64,000 bases of DNA from Selaginella moellendorffii (taxonomy: Eukaryota > Plantae > Lycopodiophyta): the NCBI RefSeq assembly GCF_000143415.4, contig NW_003314288.1, positions 357,838 to 421,837 on the forward strand. Reading direction: 5' to 3'. The notes under the pieces are model-generated. The model did no database searches. It was not told the DNA's origin and worked only from the letters and a program-made list of their open reading frames with translations. This document shows positions 13,031 to 22,566 of the stretch, one piece after another. Made by a program: the position numbers and the translations under genes. Within the stretch, counting starts at the first letter, position 1. Every line of letters begins with the position of its first letter.

Positions 13031-13483
13031 TGAAGATGATTTTTTATTTAATTTGTGTAGAGTGTGGTTTATTTTTGCATATTGAGTGTATCAATATCTT
13101 TTAGTTAGCAGATTATATTGAAGAACTGAAGACTACCTACAATTAAGTGCATGCAGCAACAGATTATATAAAAAATGAATGCAGAGAATAACAAATCGGG
13201 ATTTCTAGGAAGTTCGTGAGTGTTGTTAGTAATAATAATAATAATCATAAAAACATGATGTTCAGCCAGTTAGAAGATTGTCTGAAAATTATGCATGTAC
13301 TGATTCTTCAGCTCTTGAGCAACTGATTGCTGCTGGCTCACTTTCTATATATATAAAAGAGACAATAAACATCTAAGCTGCTGCAGTTAAGCTGTGACAT
13401 TATAAAGTTTAAAAAGGAAAAGAATTAGAAAAAGAAAAAACAGAAAACACAGTTAAGTACTAACAAATCGGGATTTCTAGGGT

Positions 13484-16400
13484 ATGCGTGCGGCGCTAGG
13501 GTTTGTGTGGTGTGTGTCATTTCTCAACAATCTCATGGAGTGGAAAACGTTTTTCAGGGATCCCACTTTCTGGTGGGACAACAGGTTCAAGAAGAAAAAC
13601 AAGTTCTTCTCAGAGTCCTACCCGGATTTCAAACATGTTTCTACCGGAGAGAGCCTGTGGATCGCCAACAGGAAAACACCAACCTGGGTCTCTGCAAAAC
13701 TCGAGTCGCTCGCTGACCCAGCTGTAGGTAAGGCCGCCACGGCCCGCTACAAATCTCCACATACCCCACCTGTAGCTGGTGATGAACCGGTGAGTTTAGG
13801 GAGGCTGATACACCGCGTGAGAGACTCAGCTGAGAGCAGATCCCTTTCTTTGGGAAAACAAGCCCATGAAGCTGTGCTCAAGAGTGATGAGCACAAAAGC
13901 AACATCTACTTGTTGACGGGATTGATCGATATGTACTGCAAGTGTGGAGAGCTTGAGGAGGCTCGCAAGATTTTCGACTCCATGGGAACCCGGAGTGTTG
14001 TGTCCTACAACGCGATCATCCAGGGCTGTGGCTCGAACGGGCAAGCTGAACTTGCTCTGGAGTACTACTCTGCCCTGACAGTTGATAACACCATTCAACC
14101 CGACGATCGGACTCATGTCGCGGTGATCAGTGCCTGCTCCAGACTTGCTACCGAATCCAGCGAGAAGAGGGAGAGAGCTCTACGCATCGGGATGGAGATC
14201 CATTCAATGCTGAGCAAGGAGAAGAAACAGGTAGATCTGTTCGTGGCGACTTGCCTGGTAGACATGTACTGCAAGTGTGGCGAGCTTGAGGAGGCTCGCA
14301 AGATTTTCCACTCCATGGGAACTCGGAGTGTTGTCTCCTACAATGCGATCATCCACGGCTGCAGCTCGAACGGGCAAGCTGAACTTGCTCTGGAGTACTA
14401 CTCTGCCCTGAGAGCTGATAACACCATTCAACCCGACGATTGGACACATGTCGCGGTGATCAGCGCCTGCTCCACACTTGCTACCGAATCCAGCGAGAAG
14501 AGGGAGAGAGCTCTACGCATCGGGATGCAAGTCCATTCAGTACTGAGCAAGGAGAAGAAACATCTAGATCTGTTCGTGGCGAATTGCCTGGTAGACATGT
14601 ACTGCAAGTGTGGCGAGCTTGAGGAGGCTCGCAAGATTTTCCACTCCATGGGAACTTGGACTGTTGAGTCCTACACCGCGATCATCCAGGGCTGCAACAC
14701 GAACGGGCGAGCTGAACTTGCTCTGGAGTACTACTCTGCCCTGAGAGTTGATAACACCATTCAACCCGACGATCGGACTCATGTCGCGGTGATCAGCGCG
14801 TGCTCCAGACTTGCTACCGAATCCAGCGAGAAGAGGGAGAGAGCTCTACGCATCGGGATGGAGATCCATTCAATGCTGAGCAAGGAGAAGAAACAGGTAG
14901 ATCTGTTCGTGGCGACTTGCCTGGTAGACATGTACTGCAAGTGTGGCGAGCTTGAGGAGGCTCGCAAGATTTTCCACTCCATGGGAACTCGGAGTGTTGT
15001 GTCCTACACCGCGATCATCCAGGGCTGCAACACGAACGGGCGAGCTGAACTTGCTCTGGAGTACTACTCTGCCCTGAGAGTTGATAACACCATTCAACCC
15101 GACGATTGGACTCATGTCGTGGTGATCAGCGCCTGCTCCACACTTGCTACCGAATCCAGCGAGAAGAGGGAGAGAGCTCTACGCATCGGGATGGAGATCC
15201 ATTCAATGCTGAGCAAGGAGAAGAAACAGCTAGATCTGTTCGTGGCGAATTGCCTGGTAGACATGTACTGCAAGTGTGGCGAGCTTGAGGAGGCTCGCAA
15301 GATTTTTCACTCCATGGGAACTCGGAGTGTTGTGTCCTACAACGCGATCATCCAGGGTTGCGGCTCGAATGGGCAAGCTGAACTTGCTCTGGAGTACTAC
15401 TCTGCCCTGAGAGCTGATAACACCATTCAAGCTGATGCTTGCACCTACACCTGCGTCCTTGTTGCTTGCGGGAGTGTGATGGCGATCAAGCTCGGGAGGG
15501 AGATTCACCAGCTGGCGAAGCATAAAGGGCTGCTGAAAAACAATCCAGTTCTGGGCTCCAGCCTGGTGAGCTTCTACGGCAAATGCGGTGATGTTGATTC
15601 TGCTCAGGAAGCGTTTGACGAGTGCCGAGCTCGGGACGACACGGCTCTCTGGAACTCTCTCATACAGGCTTACACTCTCCAGGGCCGATCGATCGAGGCC
15701 TTGGAGCGTTTCTATTCCATGACTCAGGAGGAGGGCTGTAAAGCTGACGATGTGAGTTTTGTTTCGGTGTTGAACGCTTGCAGCCATGGTGGTCTGGTCG
15801 GGAAAGGAAGGCAGCTTCTGGATGAAATGCCCAAGCAGTATGGAGTCAAGCCACGTCTGGAGCATTATGTGTGCCTGATCGATATGCTCGGGCGAGCTAA
15901 CCTCCTCGACGAAGCTGTGAGAGTTCTCAGAGCCATGCCTTTTGAACCGGATGCAGTGGTTTGGACGTCCCTGCTCGGAGCCTGCCGGAAGTGGAAGAAT
16001 TACACGATCGGCAAACTCGCGTTTGAGCGTCTTGTGGAGATGGATCCCAAGAGCGGCACGCCCTACGCATTGATGGCCAATATATTTGGAAACCTGGGGA
16101 TGCTCAGTGAAAGGGCCGCTGTTGTGGAGAGAATGAGAGGTGAAGGCAGCTTCAGGGAGCCCGGGAGAAGCTGGTGGACGGATGTTTGCTCAGGAAAAGT
16201 GCATTCTTTTTCTGTCGAGGATAGGAGTCACTCACAGAGCGACGAGATTGCGGCCAAGCTCAAGCAATTGTTGCTGAGAATGAAAGAGGAGGGGTATGCG
16301 AGCGATGTGATCAACGTTCTAAAAGACATACCCGAGGAAGAGAAAGAGGATCACCTGTGCGGCCACAGTGAGAAGCTTGCGCTGGGGTGTGCTCTGGTGA

Positions 16401-16573
16401 ACTCGCACCAGAAGGAGACCATCAGAATTGTGAAAAATCTCCGAGTTTGTGACGATTGCCATGCGGCCACTGCTCTCATCTCTAAGCTGGAAAAAAGGCT
16501 AATCATCTGCAAAGATGCCAGTCGGGTTCATGTGTTCCAGGATGGCAGATGTTCCTGTGACAACTACTTTTGA
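13484..16573 (+). CDS. PLS-class PPR protein with E1/E2 and DYW cytidine-deaminase domain, plus an N-terminal PDF (OSB-type ssDNA-binding) motif
   Basis: Intact 1029-aa ORF (true start may be the ATG at 13535). S/P/L triplets, P2-L2-S2 (LEHYVCLIDMLGRAN), E1 (AVVWTSLLGAC), PG box PGRSW, HSEKLA, KNLRVCDDCH, C-terminus CSCDNYF. N-terminus WKTFFRDPTFWWDNR...PDFKH..TGESLW...PTWV. Confidence 0.95.
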   Translation: MRAALGFVWCVSFLNNLMEWKTFFRDPTFWWDNRFKKKNKFFSESYPDFKHVSTGESLWIANRKTPTWVSAKLESLADPAVGKAATARYKSPHTPPVAGDEPVSLGRLIHRVRDSAESRSLSLGKQAHEAVLKSDEHKSNIYLLTGLIDMYCKCGELEEARKIFDSMGTRSVVSYNAIIQGCGSNGQAELALEYYSALTVDNTIQPDDRTHVAVISACSRLATESSEKRERALRIGMEIHSMLSKEKKQVDLFVATCLVDMYCKCGELEEARKIFHSMGTRSVVSYNAIIHGCSSNGQAELALEYYSALRADNTIQPDDWTHVAVISACSTLATESSEKRERALRIGMQVHSVLSKEKKHLDLFVANCLVDMYCKCGELEEARKIFHSMGTWTVESYTAIIQGCNTNGRAELALEYYSALRVDNTIQPDDRTHVAVISACSRLATESSEKRERALRIGMEIHSMLSKEKKQVDLFVATCLVDMYCKCGELEEARKIFHSMGTRSVVSYTAIIQGCNTNGRAELALEYYSALRVDNTIQPDDWTHVVVISACSTLATESSEKRERALRIGMEIHSMLSKEKKQLDLFVANCLVDMYCKCGELEEARKIFHSMGTRSVVSYNAIIQGCGSNGQAELALEYYSALRADNTIQADACTYTCVLVACGSVMAIKLGREIHQLAKHKGLLKNNPVLGSSLVSFYGKCGDVDSAQEAFDECRARDDTALWNSLIQAYTLQGRSIEALERFYSMTQEEGCKADDVSFVSVLNACSHGGLVGKGRQLLDEMPKQYGVKPRLEHYVCLIDMLGRANLLDEAVRVLRAMPFEPDAVVWTSLLGACRKWKNYTIGKLAFERLVEMDPKSGTPYALMANIFGNLGMLSERAAVVERMRGEGSFREPGRSWWTDVCSGKVHSFSVEDRSHSQSDEIAAKLKQLLLRMKEEGYASDVINVLKDIPEEEKEDHLCGHSEKLALGCALVNSHQKETIRIVKNLRVCDDCHAATALISKLEKRLIICKDASRVHVFQDGRCSCDNYF
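13928..15430 (+). repeat. 333-bp (111-aa) coding tandem repeat, about 4.5 copies of an S-P-L triplet
   Basis: DMYCKCGELEEARKIF codons start at 13928, 14261, 14594, 14927 and 15260. Confidence 0.95.
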
Positions 16574-17134
16574 AAACATGTCAGTGCTCTTTCTTGCAGT
16601 TATCCCTGGTTTTAAACCCTCCGTGAGTCAAGCAGAAACATGGGGCGCTGAGTGAGCATGCCTCGTCAAAGTACCGCCGCCAACCTGAACTTCACGGAGA
16701 AAAAAATAACATTTAAAAGTTAAAACTATGCAAAAGGAGGTTGTCTTAAATTTAAATTTCTTTTTGGTAGCAGAATCGGGGAATGCTGACTAAACCTGCC
16801 AACAGGTGCCCCAAAACAGAGCACCCAGATTCAGATAATAAGCCTTAGTATGAAGGCTGATAGCAAGTACCGCCTCATGTTCCGGGAGCAAGGTGATGGC
16901 GGCTTGCGGCATGACCAACTTTGGGTTTGTGCTCCTAGAGCACGTTGAAAGACGTGTGGAAGCTGGTGACGACAGCATTTGTTTCTTGCAATGTACTCAC
17001 CAGCTCCTCGGCGACGTCTTCCTTCCAGATTTTTTGAGCTTGTCGTGAGTGGTAACCTGCTTGCTCTCTCCTGTGACGACTTCTTCCAGCCTCTGGTGCC
17101 CAGGCTCTCTTGTGGATGGAGCTAGCCCTACACA

Positions 17135-18346: not shown

Positions 18347-19206
18347 GTACTTGATGTCTGGTGCTGGAACTGACTGGCTCCCTCCGGAGTGTGATATCTC
18401 CTTAACGGGCTGTGGCTCACCCGTTAACTTGATCCAACCATTGGCAGCCGTCAGATCGAGTCAGGTTCTCTGTGAGAATGTGGCTGACAACTGCCAGGTT
18501 CTCCAGAACCCAGCTGCCAGTTGCCAGGTTCTGGAGAACCAGGCTACCAGCTGCCAGGTTCTGGAGAACCAGGCTACCAGCTGCCAATTCTGGAAAACCC
18601 TCTCATCCTCGAATAACATTCTTCCACGTGTCTGTTAACAGTCTTGCCACAGCCCGTTAAGGCCGTTCCCGGGCATGGGCTCGCTCGTTCCCTCCAGAAC
18701 GTGCTCACCGGGCTAACGCCCGGCTCGCCCGTTCTGGGCGGGAACGTGCTCGCCCTAACCGGGAACTGCTTCTTAACAAGCTATGGCTTGCCCGTTGACT
18801 TGATCCAACTGTTGGCAGCTGGCCAATTCTGGAGAACCCTCTCATCCTCGAATAACATTCTTCCACGTGTCCGTTAATGGTCTTGCCACAGCCTGTTAAG
18901 GCCGTTCCACAGGGACGGGCTCACTCGTTCCCTCCAGAACGCGCTCGCCAGGCTAATGCCTGGCTTGCCCATTCTGGGCGGGAACGTGCTCACCCTACCC
19001 GGGAGGCCTGGTTGGTTTTGGCACGGGAACGAGGCTCCAAAATCCCTGGAGCAGCTGCTTGACGTTTTCTACAAATCATCCACCAGGAACTGCTTGCTCC
19101 TGCTCAACGTCCCTCCAAACTCGTTGGGACTGATTGACAAATCCGACTTCCAGACGCTGGAGCGGTTTAGCTCCGCCACAGATTCCATCTTCAGCATCAA
19201 CTTAGC
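18347..19206 (+). pseudogene. Alpha-L-fucosidase (GH29, FUC1-like) fragment interrupted by a ~600-bp insertion; runs into a gap
   Basis: GTDWLPPECDISL (to 18404) joins RPGWFWHGNEAPKSLEQLLDVFYKSSTRNCLLLLNVPPNSLGLI (from 19004), a conserved plant GH29 stretch. Confidence 0.85.
18402..19003. mobile_element. Tandem array of TTAA-bounded inverted-repeat (MITE-like) units
   Basis: TTAACGGGCTGTGGC at 18402 is inverted at GCCACAGCCCGTTAA ending 18660. A second unit GGCCGTTCCC...GGGAACTGC follows. The pair repeats from 18773. Internal 30-bp tandem repeats. Confidence 0.65.
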
Positions 19207-20186
19207 NNNNNNNNNNNNNNNNNNNNNNNNNNNNNNNNNNNNNNNNNNNNNNNNNNNNNNNNNNNNNNNNNNNNNNNNNNNNNNNNNNNNNNNNNNNNNN
19301 NNNNNNNNNNNNNNNNNNNNNNNNNNNNNNNNNNNNNNNNNNNNNNNNNNNNNNNNNNNNNNNNNNNNNNNNNNNNNNNNNNNNNNNNNNNNNNNNNNNN
19401 NNNNNNNNNNNNNNNNNNNNNNNNNNNNNNNNNNNNNNNNNNNNNNNNNNNNNNNNNNNNNNNNNNNNNNNNNNNNNNNNNNNNNNNNNNNNNNNNNNNN
19501 NNNNNNNNNNNNNNNNNNNNNNNNNNNNNNNNNNNNNNNNNNNNNNNNNNNNNNNNNNNNNNNNNNNNNNNNNNNNNNNNNNNNNNNNNNNNNNNNNNNN
19601 NNNNNNNNNNNNNNNNNNNNNNNNNNNNNNNNNNNNNNNNNNNNNNNNNNNNNNNNNNNNNNNNNNNNNNNNNNNNNNNNNNNNNNNNNNNNNNNNNNNN
19701 NNNNNNNNNNNNNNNNNNNNNNNNNNNNNNNNNNNNNNNNNNNNNNNNNNNNNNNNNNNNNNNNNNNNNNNNNNNNNNNNNNNNNNNNNNNNNNNNNNNN
19801 NNNNNNNNNNNNNNNNNNNNNNNNNNNNNNNNNNNNNNNNNNNNNNNNNNNNNNNNNNNNNNNNNNNNNNNNNNNNNNNNNNNNNNNNNNNNNNNNNNNN
19901 NNNNNNNNNNNNNNNNNNNNNNNNNNNNNNNNNNNNNNNNNNNNNNNNNNNNNNNNNNNNNNNNNNNNNNNNNNNNNNNNNNNNNNNNNNNNNNNNNNNN
20001 NNNNNNNNNNNNNNNNNNNNNNNNNNNNNNNNNNNNNNNNNNNNNNNNNNNNNNNNNNNNNNNNNNNNNNNNNNNNNNNNNNNNNNNNNNNNNNNNNNNN
20101 NNNNNNNNNNNNNNNNNNNNNNNNNNNNNNNNNNNNNNNNNNNNNNNNNNNNNNNNNNNNNNNNNNNNNNNNNNNNNNNNNNNNNA

Positions 20187-22566
20187 ATATATGTGTGCAA
20201 ATACTAAACAGGTAATACACCTTGTGGGTGTTCTTTTGCAAATAGCCTGCAGAAAAAAAGCTATTAAAATAAATATTTGATTTGTAAAGAATACTTGATG
20301 CATTAAAAATATAAGCTTATAAAACACTTTTTCTCCATCTAGCATGTCATAGAGGACAAAGTAGCAATCTATTTAAATTATAACTCAATGTAGATTAAAA
20401 TCACTAAAGGATGATCCTAATGATTCAAAACAACTATTATACTTGTCTCAAAAGGCTAGCAATATTCTAATCTGAATACCAATACTGGATTTGGAATGAT
20501 GCTAGACTGGGAACTGAAGTATAACTCTAGTTGAGTCTAGTATTCCTAAGAGTTTAAGAATGATTAAGATTGTACTCCAATATGTTAGTTTTGAAAAATT
20601 TCATATACTTATATTCCATGATATTGGAAGAGAAGAGAATAGATTGGTCATGAAACATTGAACAAGTGCTAGTTGCCATTGAAGAAGCAATAGTGCTCTA
20701 TACAACAACATTATATATAAAACTCCACCCTGCAGAATAGAAAGAAAGTTTTCGAAGGGAATGGATGAGTAGGAAATGGCACTTGTGATATTTCTTATTT
20801 CCAATGGGGAGAATTGTTTGGGATGTTGAGCATCCCTGATTGCTATGCTAGATAATATGTTTGATAACATATGTCAAACTTCTCATCATCAAATTACTTA
20901 ACTATCCTTCATTATGCATATATTAATTCCTAAAGCTCTCCAAGGATTTGGTTCTTGACAGATTATGGCATTGACTTTGCGGAAGATTTGATAAATTTCC
21001 TTGTAAAATCGCCTTGCATACATGCTTTGCAAAGAACAATCCAGTCAACATAGATTAAGCCCATCATAAAAGTGGGCCAATTGTCTTTAAACTTAATTCT
21101 CTGTATCAACATCCAATGAAGCCTTTGTAAATGCTAGCCATCAACGAATGGGCTGAGGCCCAGCTCCAGCAACATGCTGTGCAATGCTTCGCAAGCGGAG
21201 AGGATACCATATGGAACACAGAGAGGAGAACATATGAAGCATGTCGGGAGGCAACCAGGAAGATAGGATACAAATGGGAACGAGCTATCACCTTACTGCA
21301 ATGAGCCCATCTCCACCTGCGCCTCAAACGCAAGCTTTCCACACCACTACTTCCCACTTTCAACAAGAGCTCATGAGAGACTTCCACAGCTCACTCTCAC
21401 CGGCATGGTCTTGAGAATCTGGATTACCACGCCTAGCATGGCACTGATGTGGAGCAGGAGGAGCGCAGTGCTGCTGCTGAAATTCACAACAGCAGCATTG
21501 GATCTTACATTGCTGACTATAGCAAACCCACTGCACTTAACATTCCAGATGCATGGGACACCACGGACTCATACACAAGAGGCGGAGGACTATGCTCCTC
21601 ATGAAGACTCTCCTATGCTCAATCCTCTGTGCGTCCCGCTCTCCATCCATGGGGGATGGGGTGGCTCACGGAATGGCTGGATATCAACGATCGATGTTTG
21701 GGTCAACACATCAAAACAGTGAAGAATCAAGTCTGAACTGCTCTGAAGATGTTCTCCAGCATCACATAAGGCAATGCATCACTCACAAGGCTGGACTGGC
21801 ACGTAAATTCCGCAGCATGCATCCCTCGATTCATCTCCCCGTGGTTTTTACACGCGGTAAGAAACGTTGCCCATGAAACTCCATCAGCTGGCAAAGGCAT
21901 ATTCTCCAGGACATCCTCGGCCTCTTCCAATTGCCCTAGCCGTCCTAGAGCATCAACAATGCAGGTGTAGTGGTCTTGCGAAGGGTCCAATCCATTGTCA
22001 AAGCTCATTGCCGTGAAGTAGCTTACTGCTTCCTTGACAAGCCCCAGATGGCTACACTCCGTCAAAACAAGGGCAAACACTGCCTTGTCGGGATCAAAGC
22101 CGTGAAGAAACATCGCCCAAAATAGCTGGATCGTAGAATACGTATGGCCAGTCTGGGCATATGCTGCTAGCATCGTGTTCCAGGAGACCAAATTCCAAGT
22201 TGGTATTCTATCAAATGCCTTCTTTGCATCACAAATATTTGCATCTAAAGCATATGCCATGAGAATTGTGTTCCATGAATAGGAATCCCAGCAGCAACAC
22301 AAAGAAAACCCTCGTATAGCGTCTTTGAAATGATCTCTCTGGGCATAAACAGTGATTATCGAGTTCCATGAAACAAGATCTCTGTGTGGCATTGCTTCAA
22401 ACAATTGTTTTCCTTGATCAGCGTTGCCTTTTTGTGTGTATGACTTGATCATAATTGTCCACAAAAGTATGCTGTGCAGAGGCATCCTATCAAACAAACT
22501 CTTGGCTTGAATCAAATCCCCATTTTGGGCATAGCAGCAGTGCATTGCCCCCCAGAGGATTGCGTT
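20187..22566 (-). repeat. Left arm of an inverted segmental duplication (partner 27657-29475)
   Basis: 20881 TCTCATCATCAAATTACTTAACTATC is the reverse complement of ~28730-28755; the PPR coding parts are also homologous. Confidence 0.9.
21727..22566 (-). pseudogene. PLS/E-class PPR gene, 3' part (5' end replaced by a gypsy remnant)
   Basis: LVSWNTMLAAYAQTG, DHYTCIVDALGRLGQLEEAE, E1-like VSWATFLTACKNHG. Confidence 0.85.

What the first reader, a model, noticed from the sequence alone, without database searches (positions are those of the whole stretch)
13535..16573. PDF ssDNA-binding motif fused to a PPR array and an intact DYW deaminase, with no obvious organellar transit peptide
Seen: residues ~20-74 read WKTFFRDPTFWWDNRFKKKNKFFSESYPDFKHVSTGESLWIANRKTPTWVSAKL, followed by PLS repeats, E motifs and a DYW domain with intact HSE and CxxC zinc ligands. 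Established: WWDNR...PDFKH..TGE.LW...P.WV is the PDF motif of plant OSB/PTAC9 organellar ssDNA-binding proteins. PPR-DYW proteins are normally C-to-U RNA editors that start with a transit peptide rather than an extra domain. Here the motif begins only 2 residues after the ATG at 13535 (19 after the ATG at 13484), and a telo-box-like CTAGGGTTT lies just upstream of 13535. Inference: this may be a distinct class of sequence-programmed deaminase, either tethered to nucleoid ssDNA/R-loops for co-transcriptional editing, acting on ssDNA itself, or acting outside organelles.
Basis: partly seen in the sequence, partly recalled or inferred. Interest (0 to 1): 0.9.

Follow-up and report, generated by a model that had tools for sequence, protein, structure and literature searches.

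The report
OSB-type PDF module on PPR-DYW editor
A spikemoss (Selaginella moellendorffii) gene for an RNA-editing-type PPR-DYW cytidine deaminase really does begin with the small single-stranded-DNA-binding "PDF" module of plant OSB proteins, an architecture that recurs in other lycophytes and a fern, that I could not find described in print, and whose function is untested.

Summary
Window 13484-16573 (+) is one uninterrupted 1029-aa ORF of Selaginella moellendorffii. It holds a PDF motif (aa 20-73), a Pro/Ala-rich linker, about 20 PLS-type PPR motifs, E1/E2 and a DYW deaminase with PG box, HSE and CxxCH intact.

The PDF call is solid:
- 489 hits at E<=1e-3 among 1.84 billion proteins, with named hits being OSB1, OSB2 and OSB3.
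- All 14 signature residues are kept.
- An AlphaFold model (pLDDT 88) matches only Arabidopsis OSB1-4 PDF regions in Swiss-Prot (TM 0.67-0.72).

RNA contigs start 20-30 nt upstream of 13484 and show no upstream exon. The 13484 ATG is in frame in only 3 of 8 paralogous copies compared, so the conserved start is 13535, two residues before the motif. No canonical transit peptide is present.

The fusion is not unique to this locus. Selaginella has at least 8 near-identical loci (4 intact) and a second subfamily. Diphasiastrum, Adiantum and a transcriptome contig carry (PDF)1-3-PPR proteins, and three ESM Atlas PPR/DYW clusters match the fold. Other first-stage notes of this scan flagged further copies in this genome.

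The likeliest function is an organellar C-to-U RNA editor with an accessory single-strand nucleic-acid anchor. ssDNA deamination or an extra-organellar role remains untested.

The parts
13453..13534 (+). 5' leader of the transcript. It holds an upstream ATG at 13484 (adds 17 mostly hydrophobic residues; in frame in 3 of 8 paralogous copies compared), a telo-box core at 13497-13504 and a (TG/GT)n microsatellite at 13504-13517.
   Evidence: RNA contigs start at 13453 and 13464 (two runs) or at 13510 after 32 unlike letters (two runs). A GT insertion lies behind 13509 in two runs. Paralog alignment shows +2, -6 and -9 nt length changes here. The telo-box occurs once against 2.5 expected.
13535..16573 (+). 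Coding sequence from the conserved start codon (MEW...), 1012 aa plus stop. The long form from 13484 gives 1029 aa.
   Evidence: for the ORF. L001 and L002 have no in-frame ATG before the MEW start, whereas L003, L004 and the window do.
13541..13702 (+). PDF motif (aa 20-73), an OSB-type single-stranded nucleic-acid-binding module.
13703..13792 (+). Pro/Ala/Gly-rich linker (aa 74-103), probably flexible.
   Evidence: pLDDT falls to 60 and then 37 after model residue ~63. Composition.
13793..15952 (+). PLS-class PPR array, about 20 motifs (aa 104-823), ending in P2-L2-S2.
   Evidence: Pfam PPR, PPR_1, PPR_2 and PPR_3 hits. Motif parsing.
13931..15430 (+). 4.5 tandem copies of a 333-bp unit (one S-P-L triplet, 111 aa) at 94% identity. 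Differences include the fifth residue of the S and P motifs (T/N, N/T).
   Evidence: TRF result. Unit alignment.
15953..16156 (+). E1/E2 motifs (aa 824-891).
   Evidence: Pfam E_motif at 839-897. Alignment to 9kfx.
16157..16570 (+). DYW cytidine deaminase domain (aa 892-1029): PG box 16157-16177, HSE 16364-16372, CDDCH 16448-16462, CSC..NYF terminus 16550-16570.
   Evidence: Pfam DYW_deaminase 2.9e-31. End-to-end alignment with 9kfx (E=2.2e-50) and 7o4e. Coordinates.
16574..16937 (+). 3' untranslated region, as far as the RNA contigs reach.
   Evidence: Contig ends at 16736-16937, and depth falls to about 0 beyond 16990.

Best explanation
This is one copy of a young, multi-copy Selaginella moellendorffii subfamily of PLS-class PPR-DYW proteins, the kind that perform site-specific C-to-U RNA editing in plastids and mitochondria. 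Its N-terminus is not a transit peptide but a single OSB-type PDF module, joined by a ~30-residue flexible linker to the first PPR motif.

Shown:
- The one-exon architecture PDF-linker-(PLS)n-E1-E2-DYW.
- Intact catalytic and zinc-binding residues.
- Transcription of the family.
- No upstream exon in the RNA contigs.
- Strict conservation of the PDF signature in PPR-linked copies from at least four plant lineages.

Inferred mechanism: the PPR array reads an RNA sequence and places the DYW deaminase on a cytidine 3' of the footprint. The PDF module sits at the 5' end of that footprint and acts as a sequence-independent grip on single-stranded nucleic acid. That strand could be RNA upstream of the site, or single-stranded DNA of the nucleoid near the nascent transcript. 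Either would raise affinity or concentrate the editor where transcripts emerge. Import into organelles would have to rely on a non-canonical signal.
For: Architecture and catalytic integrity.

PDF identity.

OSB PDF motifs are reported as the ssDNA-binding part of OSB1, and OSB1/2 prefer ssDNA over dsDNA or RNA (PMC6963530, PMC4166229, both citing Zaegel 2006).

Constraint in the PPR context: all eight PPR-linked PDF motifs keep the 14 signature positions, apart from two K-to-R changes and one W-to-R change. They come from Selaginella (two subfamilies), Diphasiastrum, Adiantum and the transcript contig SRR4210093. They cluster on the PDF tree. The query pairs with P0099 at SH-aLRT 98, and a single clade is not rejected (p-AU 0.83).

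Three ESM Atlas PPR/DYW clusters (127, 57 and 63 members) match the PDF model at TM 0.72-0.80.

Transcription: four runs the tool guessed to be RNA cover about 13453-16937 and show zero depth in the flanks.

Organellar leaning: homologue P0022 has a complete ORF with a 34-aa Ser/Thr/Arg-rich leader before its three PDF motifs. The DYW domain is the PG type that aligns end to end with the solved C-to-U RNA editors.
Against: - No canonical transit peptide and no upstream exon, so organellar location is assumed, not shown.
- Published OSB1/2 data favour ssDNA over RNA, so an RNA-grip role for PDF is an extrapolation.
- Half of the 8 paralogous loci examined carry frameshifts or truncations, three of them in the PDF motif itself.
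- Synonymous to nonsynonymous codon differences between copies are about 1:1.5, so there is no clear purifying selection within the young family.
- The RNA contigs differ from this copy (13736 G>A, +GT), so transcription is shown for the family, not for this exact copy.
- No editing target was predicted or tested.
Confidence: 0.55

Rival explanations
1. A DNA-directed or extra-organellar deaminase. The PDF module brings the DYW domain to single-stranded DNA (R-loops, replication or recombination intermediates, retroelement cDNA), or the protein works in the nucleus or cytosol. In that case cytidines in ssDNA, or in non-organellar RNA, are deaminated.
For: - No transit peptide and no upstream exon.
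- PDF is the ssDNA-binding part of OSB1 and prefers ssDNA to RNA (PMC4166229, PMC6963530).
- The family shows birth-and-death turnover and repeat-number variation, with changes at base-specifying PPR positions. This is the pattern expected of a conflict-driven system.
- The KKKNK stretch fits a minimal nuclear-localisation pattern (inference).
Against: - The DYW domain is the standard PG-type RNA-editing form, and I know of no DYW domain shown to act on DNA.
- A PPR array reads RNA.
- Homologue P0022 has a transit-peptide-like leader.
- The basic stretch is part of the conserved PDF signature in organellar OSBs.
Confidence: 0.1
2. The PDF module is kept for something other than nucleic-acid binding. 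It could be a non-cleaved import or sorting determinant, or a protein-protein contact (for example with nucleoid or editosome partners). It would have taken the place of the presequence.
For: - It sits at the extreme N-terminus in three independent gene models (this gene, P0099 and Adiantum P0089).
- It begins with a confidently modelled helix rich in basic and aromatic residues.
- AtOSB2 is reported to form tetramers (PMC6963530).
Against: - The residues conserved in PPR-linked copies are the same 14 as in OSB proteins, where the motif is C-terminal and binds ssDNA.
- Diphasiastrum isoforms and P0022 carry extra N-terminal sequence ahead of the motif.
Confidence: 0.15
3. This copy, or the whole young subfamily, is on its way to decay. 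The fusion is inherited and harmless, the ORF is intact only because the duplications are recent and homogenised by gene conversion, and the protein has no specific role.
For: - Four of 8 paralogous loci are frameshifted or truncated.
- Synonymous to nonsynonymous differences are about 1:1.5.
- Coding regions are 98-100% identical against 89-95% in the flanks, at synonymous sites too, which points to gene conversion.
- The number of repeat units differs between copies (800 to 1234 aa).
Against: - Four ORFs of 800-1234 aa have no stop codon.
- All catalytic residues are intact.
- RNA coverage is high.
- The architecture and PDF signature are conserved from lycophytes to a fern.
Confidence: 0.15

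Closest known systems
PLS-class PPR-DYW RNA editing factors of land plants (e.g. Physcomitrium PPR56/PPR65, Arabidopsis OTP86; solved structures 9kfx, 7o4e)
   Same: PLS triplets, P2-L2-S2, E1/E2 and a DYW domain with PG box, HxE and CxxCH. The C-terminal 196 aa align end to end with 9kfx at E=2.2e-50.
   Different: - It starts with a PDF module instead of a transit peptide.
- The Swiss-Prot AFDB search (550,129 entries) returned only OSB1-4 for this fold and no PPR protein.
- The C-terminal tripeptide is NYF.
- The PPR array holds 4.5 near-identical 111-aa triplets.
OSB proteins (Arabidopsis OSB1-4; organellar ssDNA-binding proteins, Zaegel et al. 2006)
   Same: The PDF motif. It has 36-42% identity and TM 0.67-0.72 to the PDF regions of OSB1-4, and all signature residues are kept.
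   Different: - No OB-fold/SSB-like domain, as there is no PF00436 hit.
- PDF is N-terminal and single, not C-terminal after an OB-like domain.
- No transit peptide.
- It is fused to an RNA-reading array and a deaminase.
- A 2014 survey lists OSB as not detected in S. moellendorffii (PMC4166229).
PPR proteins with other appended domains (PRORP with a NYN nuclease, PPR-SMR), recalled from general knowledge
   Same: The principle of a PPR array joined to a second functional module.
   Different: Those modules are C-terminal catalytic domains. Here a nucleic-acid-binding module is added at the N-terminus of a protein that already has a C-terminal deaminase. I did not test these families here.
Restorer-of-fertility-like (RFL) PPR genes, recalled from general knowledge
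   Same: Clustered and duplicated loci, unequal repeat numbers, changes concentrated at base-specifying residues and many decayed copies.
   Different: RFL proteins are P-class and have no deaminase or PDF. The likeness is one of evolutionary dynamics only.

Membership tests
PPR-DYW (PLS-class) RNA editing factors | Tandem P-L-S pentatricopeptide motifs ending in P2-L2-S2 | tested here: met
   Pfam PPR families with 12-14 stretches. Motif parsing gives about 20 motifs.
PPR-DYW (PLS-class) RNA editing factors | E1/E2 motifs followed by a DYW domain with PG box, HxE and CxxCH zinc/catalytic residues | tested here: met
   E_motif, Eplus_motif and DYW_deaminase hits. EPGRSW, HSE, CDDCH and CSC align with 9kfx and 7o4e.
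PPR-DYW (PLS-class) RNA editing factors | C-terminal D-Y-W tripeptide | tested here: not met
   The protein ends in N-Y-F. From general knowledge, variants of the tripeptide occur in active factors, so this is a weak criterion.
PPR-DYW (PLS-class) RNA editing factors | N-terminal organellar transit peptide | tested here: not met
   - The conserved start M18 is followed directly by PDF.
- The first 30 aa hold 4 acidic residues.
- RNA contigs show no upstream exon.
- The 17-aa extension from 13484 is in frame in only 3 of 8 copies.
- No targeting predictor was available.
PPR-DYW (PLS-class) RNA editing factors | Site-specific C-to-U editing of an organellar transcript | not testable with these tools
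[quoted passage not shown] | One or more PDF motifs | tested here: met
[quoted passage not shown] | Central or N-terminal OB-fold / SSB-like domain preceding the PDF motifs | tested here: not met
   There is no PF00436 hit in the query at E<=1, whereas OSB-like hits P0026 and P0001 show it. The sequence after PDF is a PPR array.
[quoted passage not shown] | Preferential binding of ssDNA | not testable with these tools
   Known for OSB1/2 from the literature (PMC4166229, PMC6963530). Not measurable here.

The most novel reading that the evidence does not exclude
PDF-PPR-DYW proteins are a lycophyte/fern class of programmable deaminases. An ssDNA-binding head couples them to DNA, so they would edit co-transcriptionally at the nucleoid or deaminate single-stranded DNA itself. 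They could also act in the nucleus or cytosol, for example against retroelements, given the missing transit peptide and the arms-race-like turnover of the repeat array.
Probability: 0.1. Interest if true: 0.9.

Novelty: new variant of a known kind. Interest (0 to 1): 0.6.

Why it matters
PPR-DYW proteins are the plant RNA editors now being engineered as programmable C-to-U (and U-to-C) tools. Selaginella has among the heaviest organellar editing loads known. A conserved, previously unremarked accessory module on these editors is of interest for three reasons:
- It points to a physical link between editing and the nucleoid or single-stranded nucleic acid.
- It gives a concrete handle (with and without PDF) for testing how editors find nascent transcripts.
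- It shows that the PDF module, so far treated as an OSB hallmark, is a mobile domain. It also occurs on a kinesin and an IBB-domain protein.

The PDF fold has no solved structural relative, so it is also a structural-biology target. The finding also exposes systematic mis-annotation: RefSeq models of this family cut out the repeat array.

Tried and rejected
- **Word-indexed protein searches** restricted to the PDF region returned only Selaginella paralogues. The census of PDF-PPR proteins therefore rests on the top 150 of 489 hits and on the Atlas fold search.
- **Family and structure libraries for the N-terminus.** Pfam has no model for it. A PDB sequence search gave only chance hits with E>0.2. 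Foldseek against the PDB and VIA-align wide (best Z 3.0) found no solved relative. The Atlas feature search was uninformative, with scores <=0.68.
- **Upstream targeting exon: rejected.** There are no joints at the 5' end. The 32 unlike letters before 13510 in two runs abut a GT microsatellite with no AG acceptor, and they occur neither in the window nor in nine fetched loci. They most likely come from another copy or allele.
- **Retroposed (mRNA-derived) duplication: rejected.** Kilobases of both flanks are co-duplicated.
- **Telo-box significance: rejected**.
- **Purifying selection within the young family: not demonstrable**.
- **Literature.** Zaegel et al. 2006 could not be read. Literature searches for PDF with PPR found nothing relevant.
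Full report
**What is there.** Window 13484..16573 (+) is a single open reading frame of 1029 aa. Pfam finds 12-14 PPR stretches, the E and E+ motifs and a DYW deaminase domain (E=2.9e-31). It finds nothing for the first ~100 residues.

The protein's first 97 aa are identical to RefSeq XP_024536012.1 of Selaginella moellendorffii, so the window is from that lycophyte. That RefSeq model has only 497 aa. It removes aa 150-643 (the repeat array) and aa 695-733 as introns. The genome reads straight through both, and four RNA runs show no joint inside the gene. Those contigs are fragmented within the repeats, so they cannot fully exclude splicing.

**The N-terminal motif is a true PDF motif.**
- phmmer of aa 1-97 against 1.84 billion cluster representatives gave 489 proteins at E<=1e-3 and 130 at E<=1e-10. 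Many carry 2-13 tandem copies of the matched stretch, aa ~19-77.
- Named members are 'protein OSB1, mitochondrial-like', 'protein OSB2, chloroplastic-like' and 'organellar single-stranded DNA binding protein 3'.
- A profile built from 458 motif instances has a consensus of the form W..L..NP..WWDNR..K..PK.PDFKHK.TG.ALWL...P.WV. It scores the query at 69.8 bits.
- All 14 invariant or near-invariant columns are kept: W20, P27, W30, D32, R34, K37, P47, D48, F49, K50, L58, W59, P66 and W68.
- With a 131-sequence alignment, AlphaFold2 gives a confident small alpha/beta domain: pLDDT 87.7, pTM 0.73, with helix, strand, short helix, two strands and a helix.
- Against Swiss-Prot AlphaFold models, the only significant matches are the PDF regions of Arabidopsis OSB1 (185-240), OSB2, OSB3 and OSB4. 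They score probability 1.00, TM 0.67-0.72 and rmsd 1.4-1.6 A.
- The cluster library gives further OSB proteins.
- No solved structure resembles it. Foldseek E-values are >3 and the best VIA-align Z is 3.0.
- Reviews citing Zaegel et al. 2006 describe this ~50-aa motif as the ssDNA-binding part of OSB1. They report that OSB1/2 prefer ssDNA to dsDNA or RNA (PMC6963530, PMC4166229). I could not read the primary paper.

**The rest of the protein.**
- After PDF (aa 20-73) comes a Pro/Ala/Gly-rich stretch (aa 74-103), where model confidence collapses.
- About 20 PLS-type PPR motifs follow, then E1/E2 and a DYW domain.
- The last 196 aa align end to end with the solved synthetic PPR-DYW editor 9kfx (E=2.2e-50) and with the OTP86 DYW domain 7o4e. 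The PG box, HSE, CDDCH and CSC are conserved, and the terminal tripeptide is NYF.
- Inside the array, 4.5 copies of a 333-bp unit (one S-P-L triplet) are 94% identical.
- The differences between units include the fifth residue of the S and P motifs (T/N and N/T), which is a base-specifying position. Another first-stage note (s1-349028) raised this separately.

**Where the protein starts.**
- RNA contigs from four runs begin at 13453, 13464 or 13510 and end at 16736-16937. Depth in both flanks is essentially zero, so this is transcription and not DNA carry-over. No joint to an upstream exon appears.
- The tool only guessed that these runs are RNA.
- The contigs differ from this copy at 13736 and by a GT insertion. 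Expression is therefore shown for the near-identical family rather than for this exact copy.
- In an alignment of eight paralogous copies, the segment between the two ATGs varies in length by +2 (a GT microsatellite), -6 and -9 nt. The 13484 ATG is in frame only in the window, L003 and L004.
- In L001 and L002 the first in-frame Met is the MEW start. The GT insertion seen in two RNA runs also puts 13484 out of frame.
- The conserved start is therefore 13535, two residues before W20.
- From that Met, the first 30 residues hold 4 acidic and 7 basic residues, unlike a transit peptide. The optional 17-aa extension is hydrophobic.
- The second Selaginella subfamily (P0099) and Adiantum P0089 also begin directly with PDF. 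Diphasiastrum isoforms and the transcript-derived P0022 have 34-60 extra residues. The P0022 leader is Ser/Thr/Arg-rich and sits behind an in-frame stop, so it is complete.

**How common the fusion is.**
- Within S. moellendorffii I fetched seven further loci of this subfamily.
- Four copies, counting the window, have uninterrupted ORFs of 800, 1009, 1029 and 1234 aa that differ in repeat number.
- L004 is frameshifted in the DYW domain. L005 and L006 are frameshifted inside PDF. A second inverted copy in L006 has in-frame deletions in the PDF region. L007 lacks the first half of PDF.
- The duplications include kilobases of flank and a neighbouring gene, so they are segmental and not retroposed.
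- Coding parts are 98-100% identical against 89-95% for the flanks. Synonymous and nonsynonymous differences are both few, at about 1:1.5. This points to gene conversion rather than demonstrable purifying selection.
- Beyond this subfamily:
  - P0099/P0155 is a Selaginella protein of 910 aa with PDF plus PPR, and an intron splits its PDF.
  - Diphasiastrum KAJ7568880 has PDF plus PPR plus E.
  - Adiantum KAI5061374 has two PDF motifs plus PPR.
  - P0022 has three PDF motifs plus PPR plus E.
- On a tree of 131 PDF motifs, the query pairs with P0099 (SH-aLRT 98). The eight PPR-linked motifs are clustered (3 changes against 7.9 in shuffles). A single clade is not rejected (p-AU 0.83). With only 60 columns, and since relatedness of the species could produce the same clustering, this is compatible with one old fusion but does not prove it.
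- A fold search of the ESM Atlas found three PPR/DYW clusters (127, 57 and 63 members, Streptophyta) matching the PDF model at TM 0.72-0.80.
- No PPR protein appeared among the Swiss-Prot hits, so reviewed PPR entries such as those of Arabidopsis seem to lack the module.
- Other first-stage notes of this scan flagged the same architecture on other pieces of this genome. They are unchecked and are not independent evidence.

**Interpretation.** The safest reading is an organellar C-to-U RNA editing factor that has gained a flexibly tethered, sequence-independent single-strand nucleic-acid-binding head at the 5' side of its PPR footprint. The strict retention of the OSB-type signature in every PPR-linked copy argues that the module still binds what it binds in OSBs. 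Whether that is RNA or nucleoid ssDNA in this context is inference.

The absence of a presequence is real for this gene, but it does not show a non-organellar location. The bolder readings (ssDNA deamination, extra-organellar action) are not excluded and nothing here supports them directly. A decaying young family is a serious alternative for individual copies, but less so for the architecture as a whole.

**Novelty.** Seven full-text searches, four of them aimed at PDF together with PPR, found no paper linking PDF motifs to PPR proteins. A 2026 survey of 182 OSB genes does not mention such fusions (PMC13393729). A 2014 survey lists OSB as not detected in S. moellendorffii (PMC4166229). Subscription literature is not covered, so prior description cannot be excluded. 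I class it as a new variant of a known kind.

Noticed in passing
window 13931-15430 and 15566-15682 (aa 150-643 and 695-733): RefSeq/Gnomon models of this gene and its paralogues (471-617 aa) remove the tandem PPR repeats, and a further 39 codons, as introns. The genomic ORFs are 800-1234 aa, and the RNA contigs show no such joints.
   Followed up: partly
window 13931-15430; L001-L003: The 111-aa S-P-L triplet is repeated nearly identically. Differences fall on the fifth residue of the S and P motifs, and the unit number differs between paralogues. This resembles the turnover seen in restorer-like PPR genes.
   Followed up: partly
window 13504-17; L001-L007: A (GT)n microsatellite in the 5' leader changes length between copies and in the RNA contigs. 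This switches the upstream ATG (13484) between an in-frame 17-aa extension and an overlapping out-of-frame upstream ORF.
   Followed up: partly
window 13190-13209 and 13462-13481: An exact 20-nt direct repeat (AACAAATCGGGATTTCTAGG) lies 272 nt apart, just upstream of the gene. The second copy ends two bases before the 13484 ATG.
   Followed up: no
model of aa 15-85 (ESM Atlas search): The PDF fold shows weak likeness to uncharacterised phage (Uroviricota) protein clusters (TM 0.58-0.63) and to a phage Rad52/Rad22-family cluster (TM 0.48). The feature search also put Phage_gp49 clusters first, at low scores. This is a possible distant link to phage single-strand-DNA proteins.
   Followed up: no
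P0037, P0001, AFDB A0A484M7X6: PDF motifs occur in other contexts. Three copies precede a kinesin motor domain (1526 aa). One copy sits in an IBB-domain protein. A Kingdonia uniflora protein has 13 tandem copies.
   Followed up: no
literature (PMC4166229): A 2014 survey lists OSB as not detected in S. moellendorffii. If that is correct, the PDF module survives in this species only on PPR proteins.
   Followed up: no
window ~18950-20250; L002 8084-10904; L004 8092-10133: A neighbouring gene (Ferritin_2 plus F5/F8 type C domains in the paralogous loci) is co-duplicated with the PPR gene. The window copy is interrupted by a run of N from about 17200.
   Followed up: no
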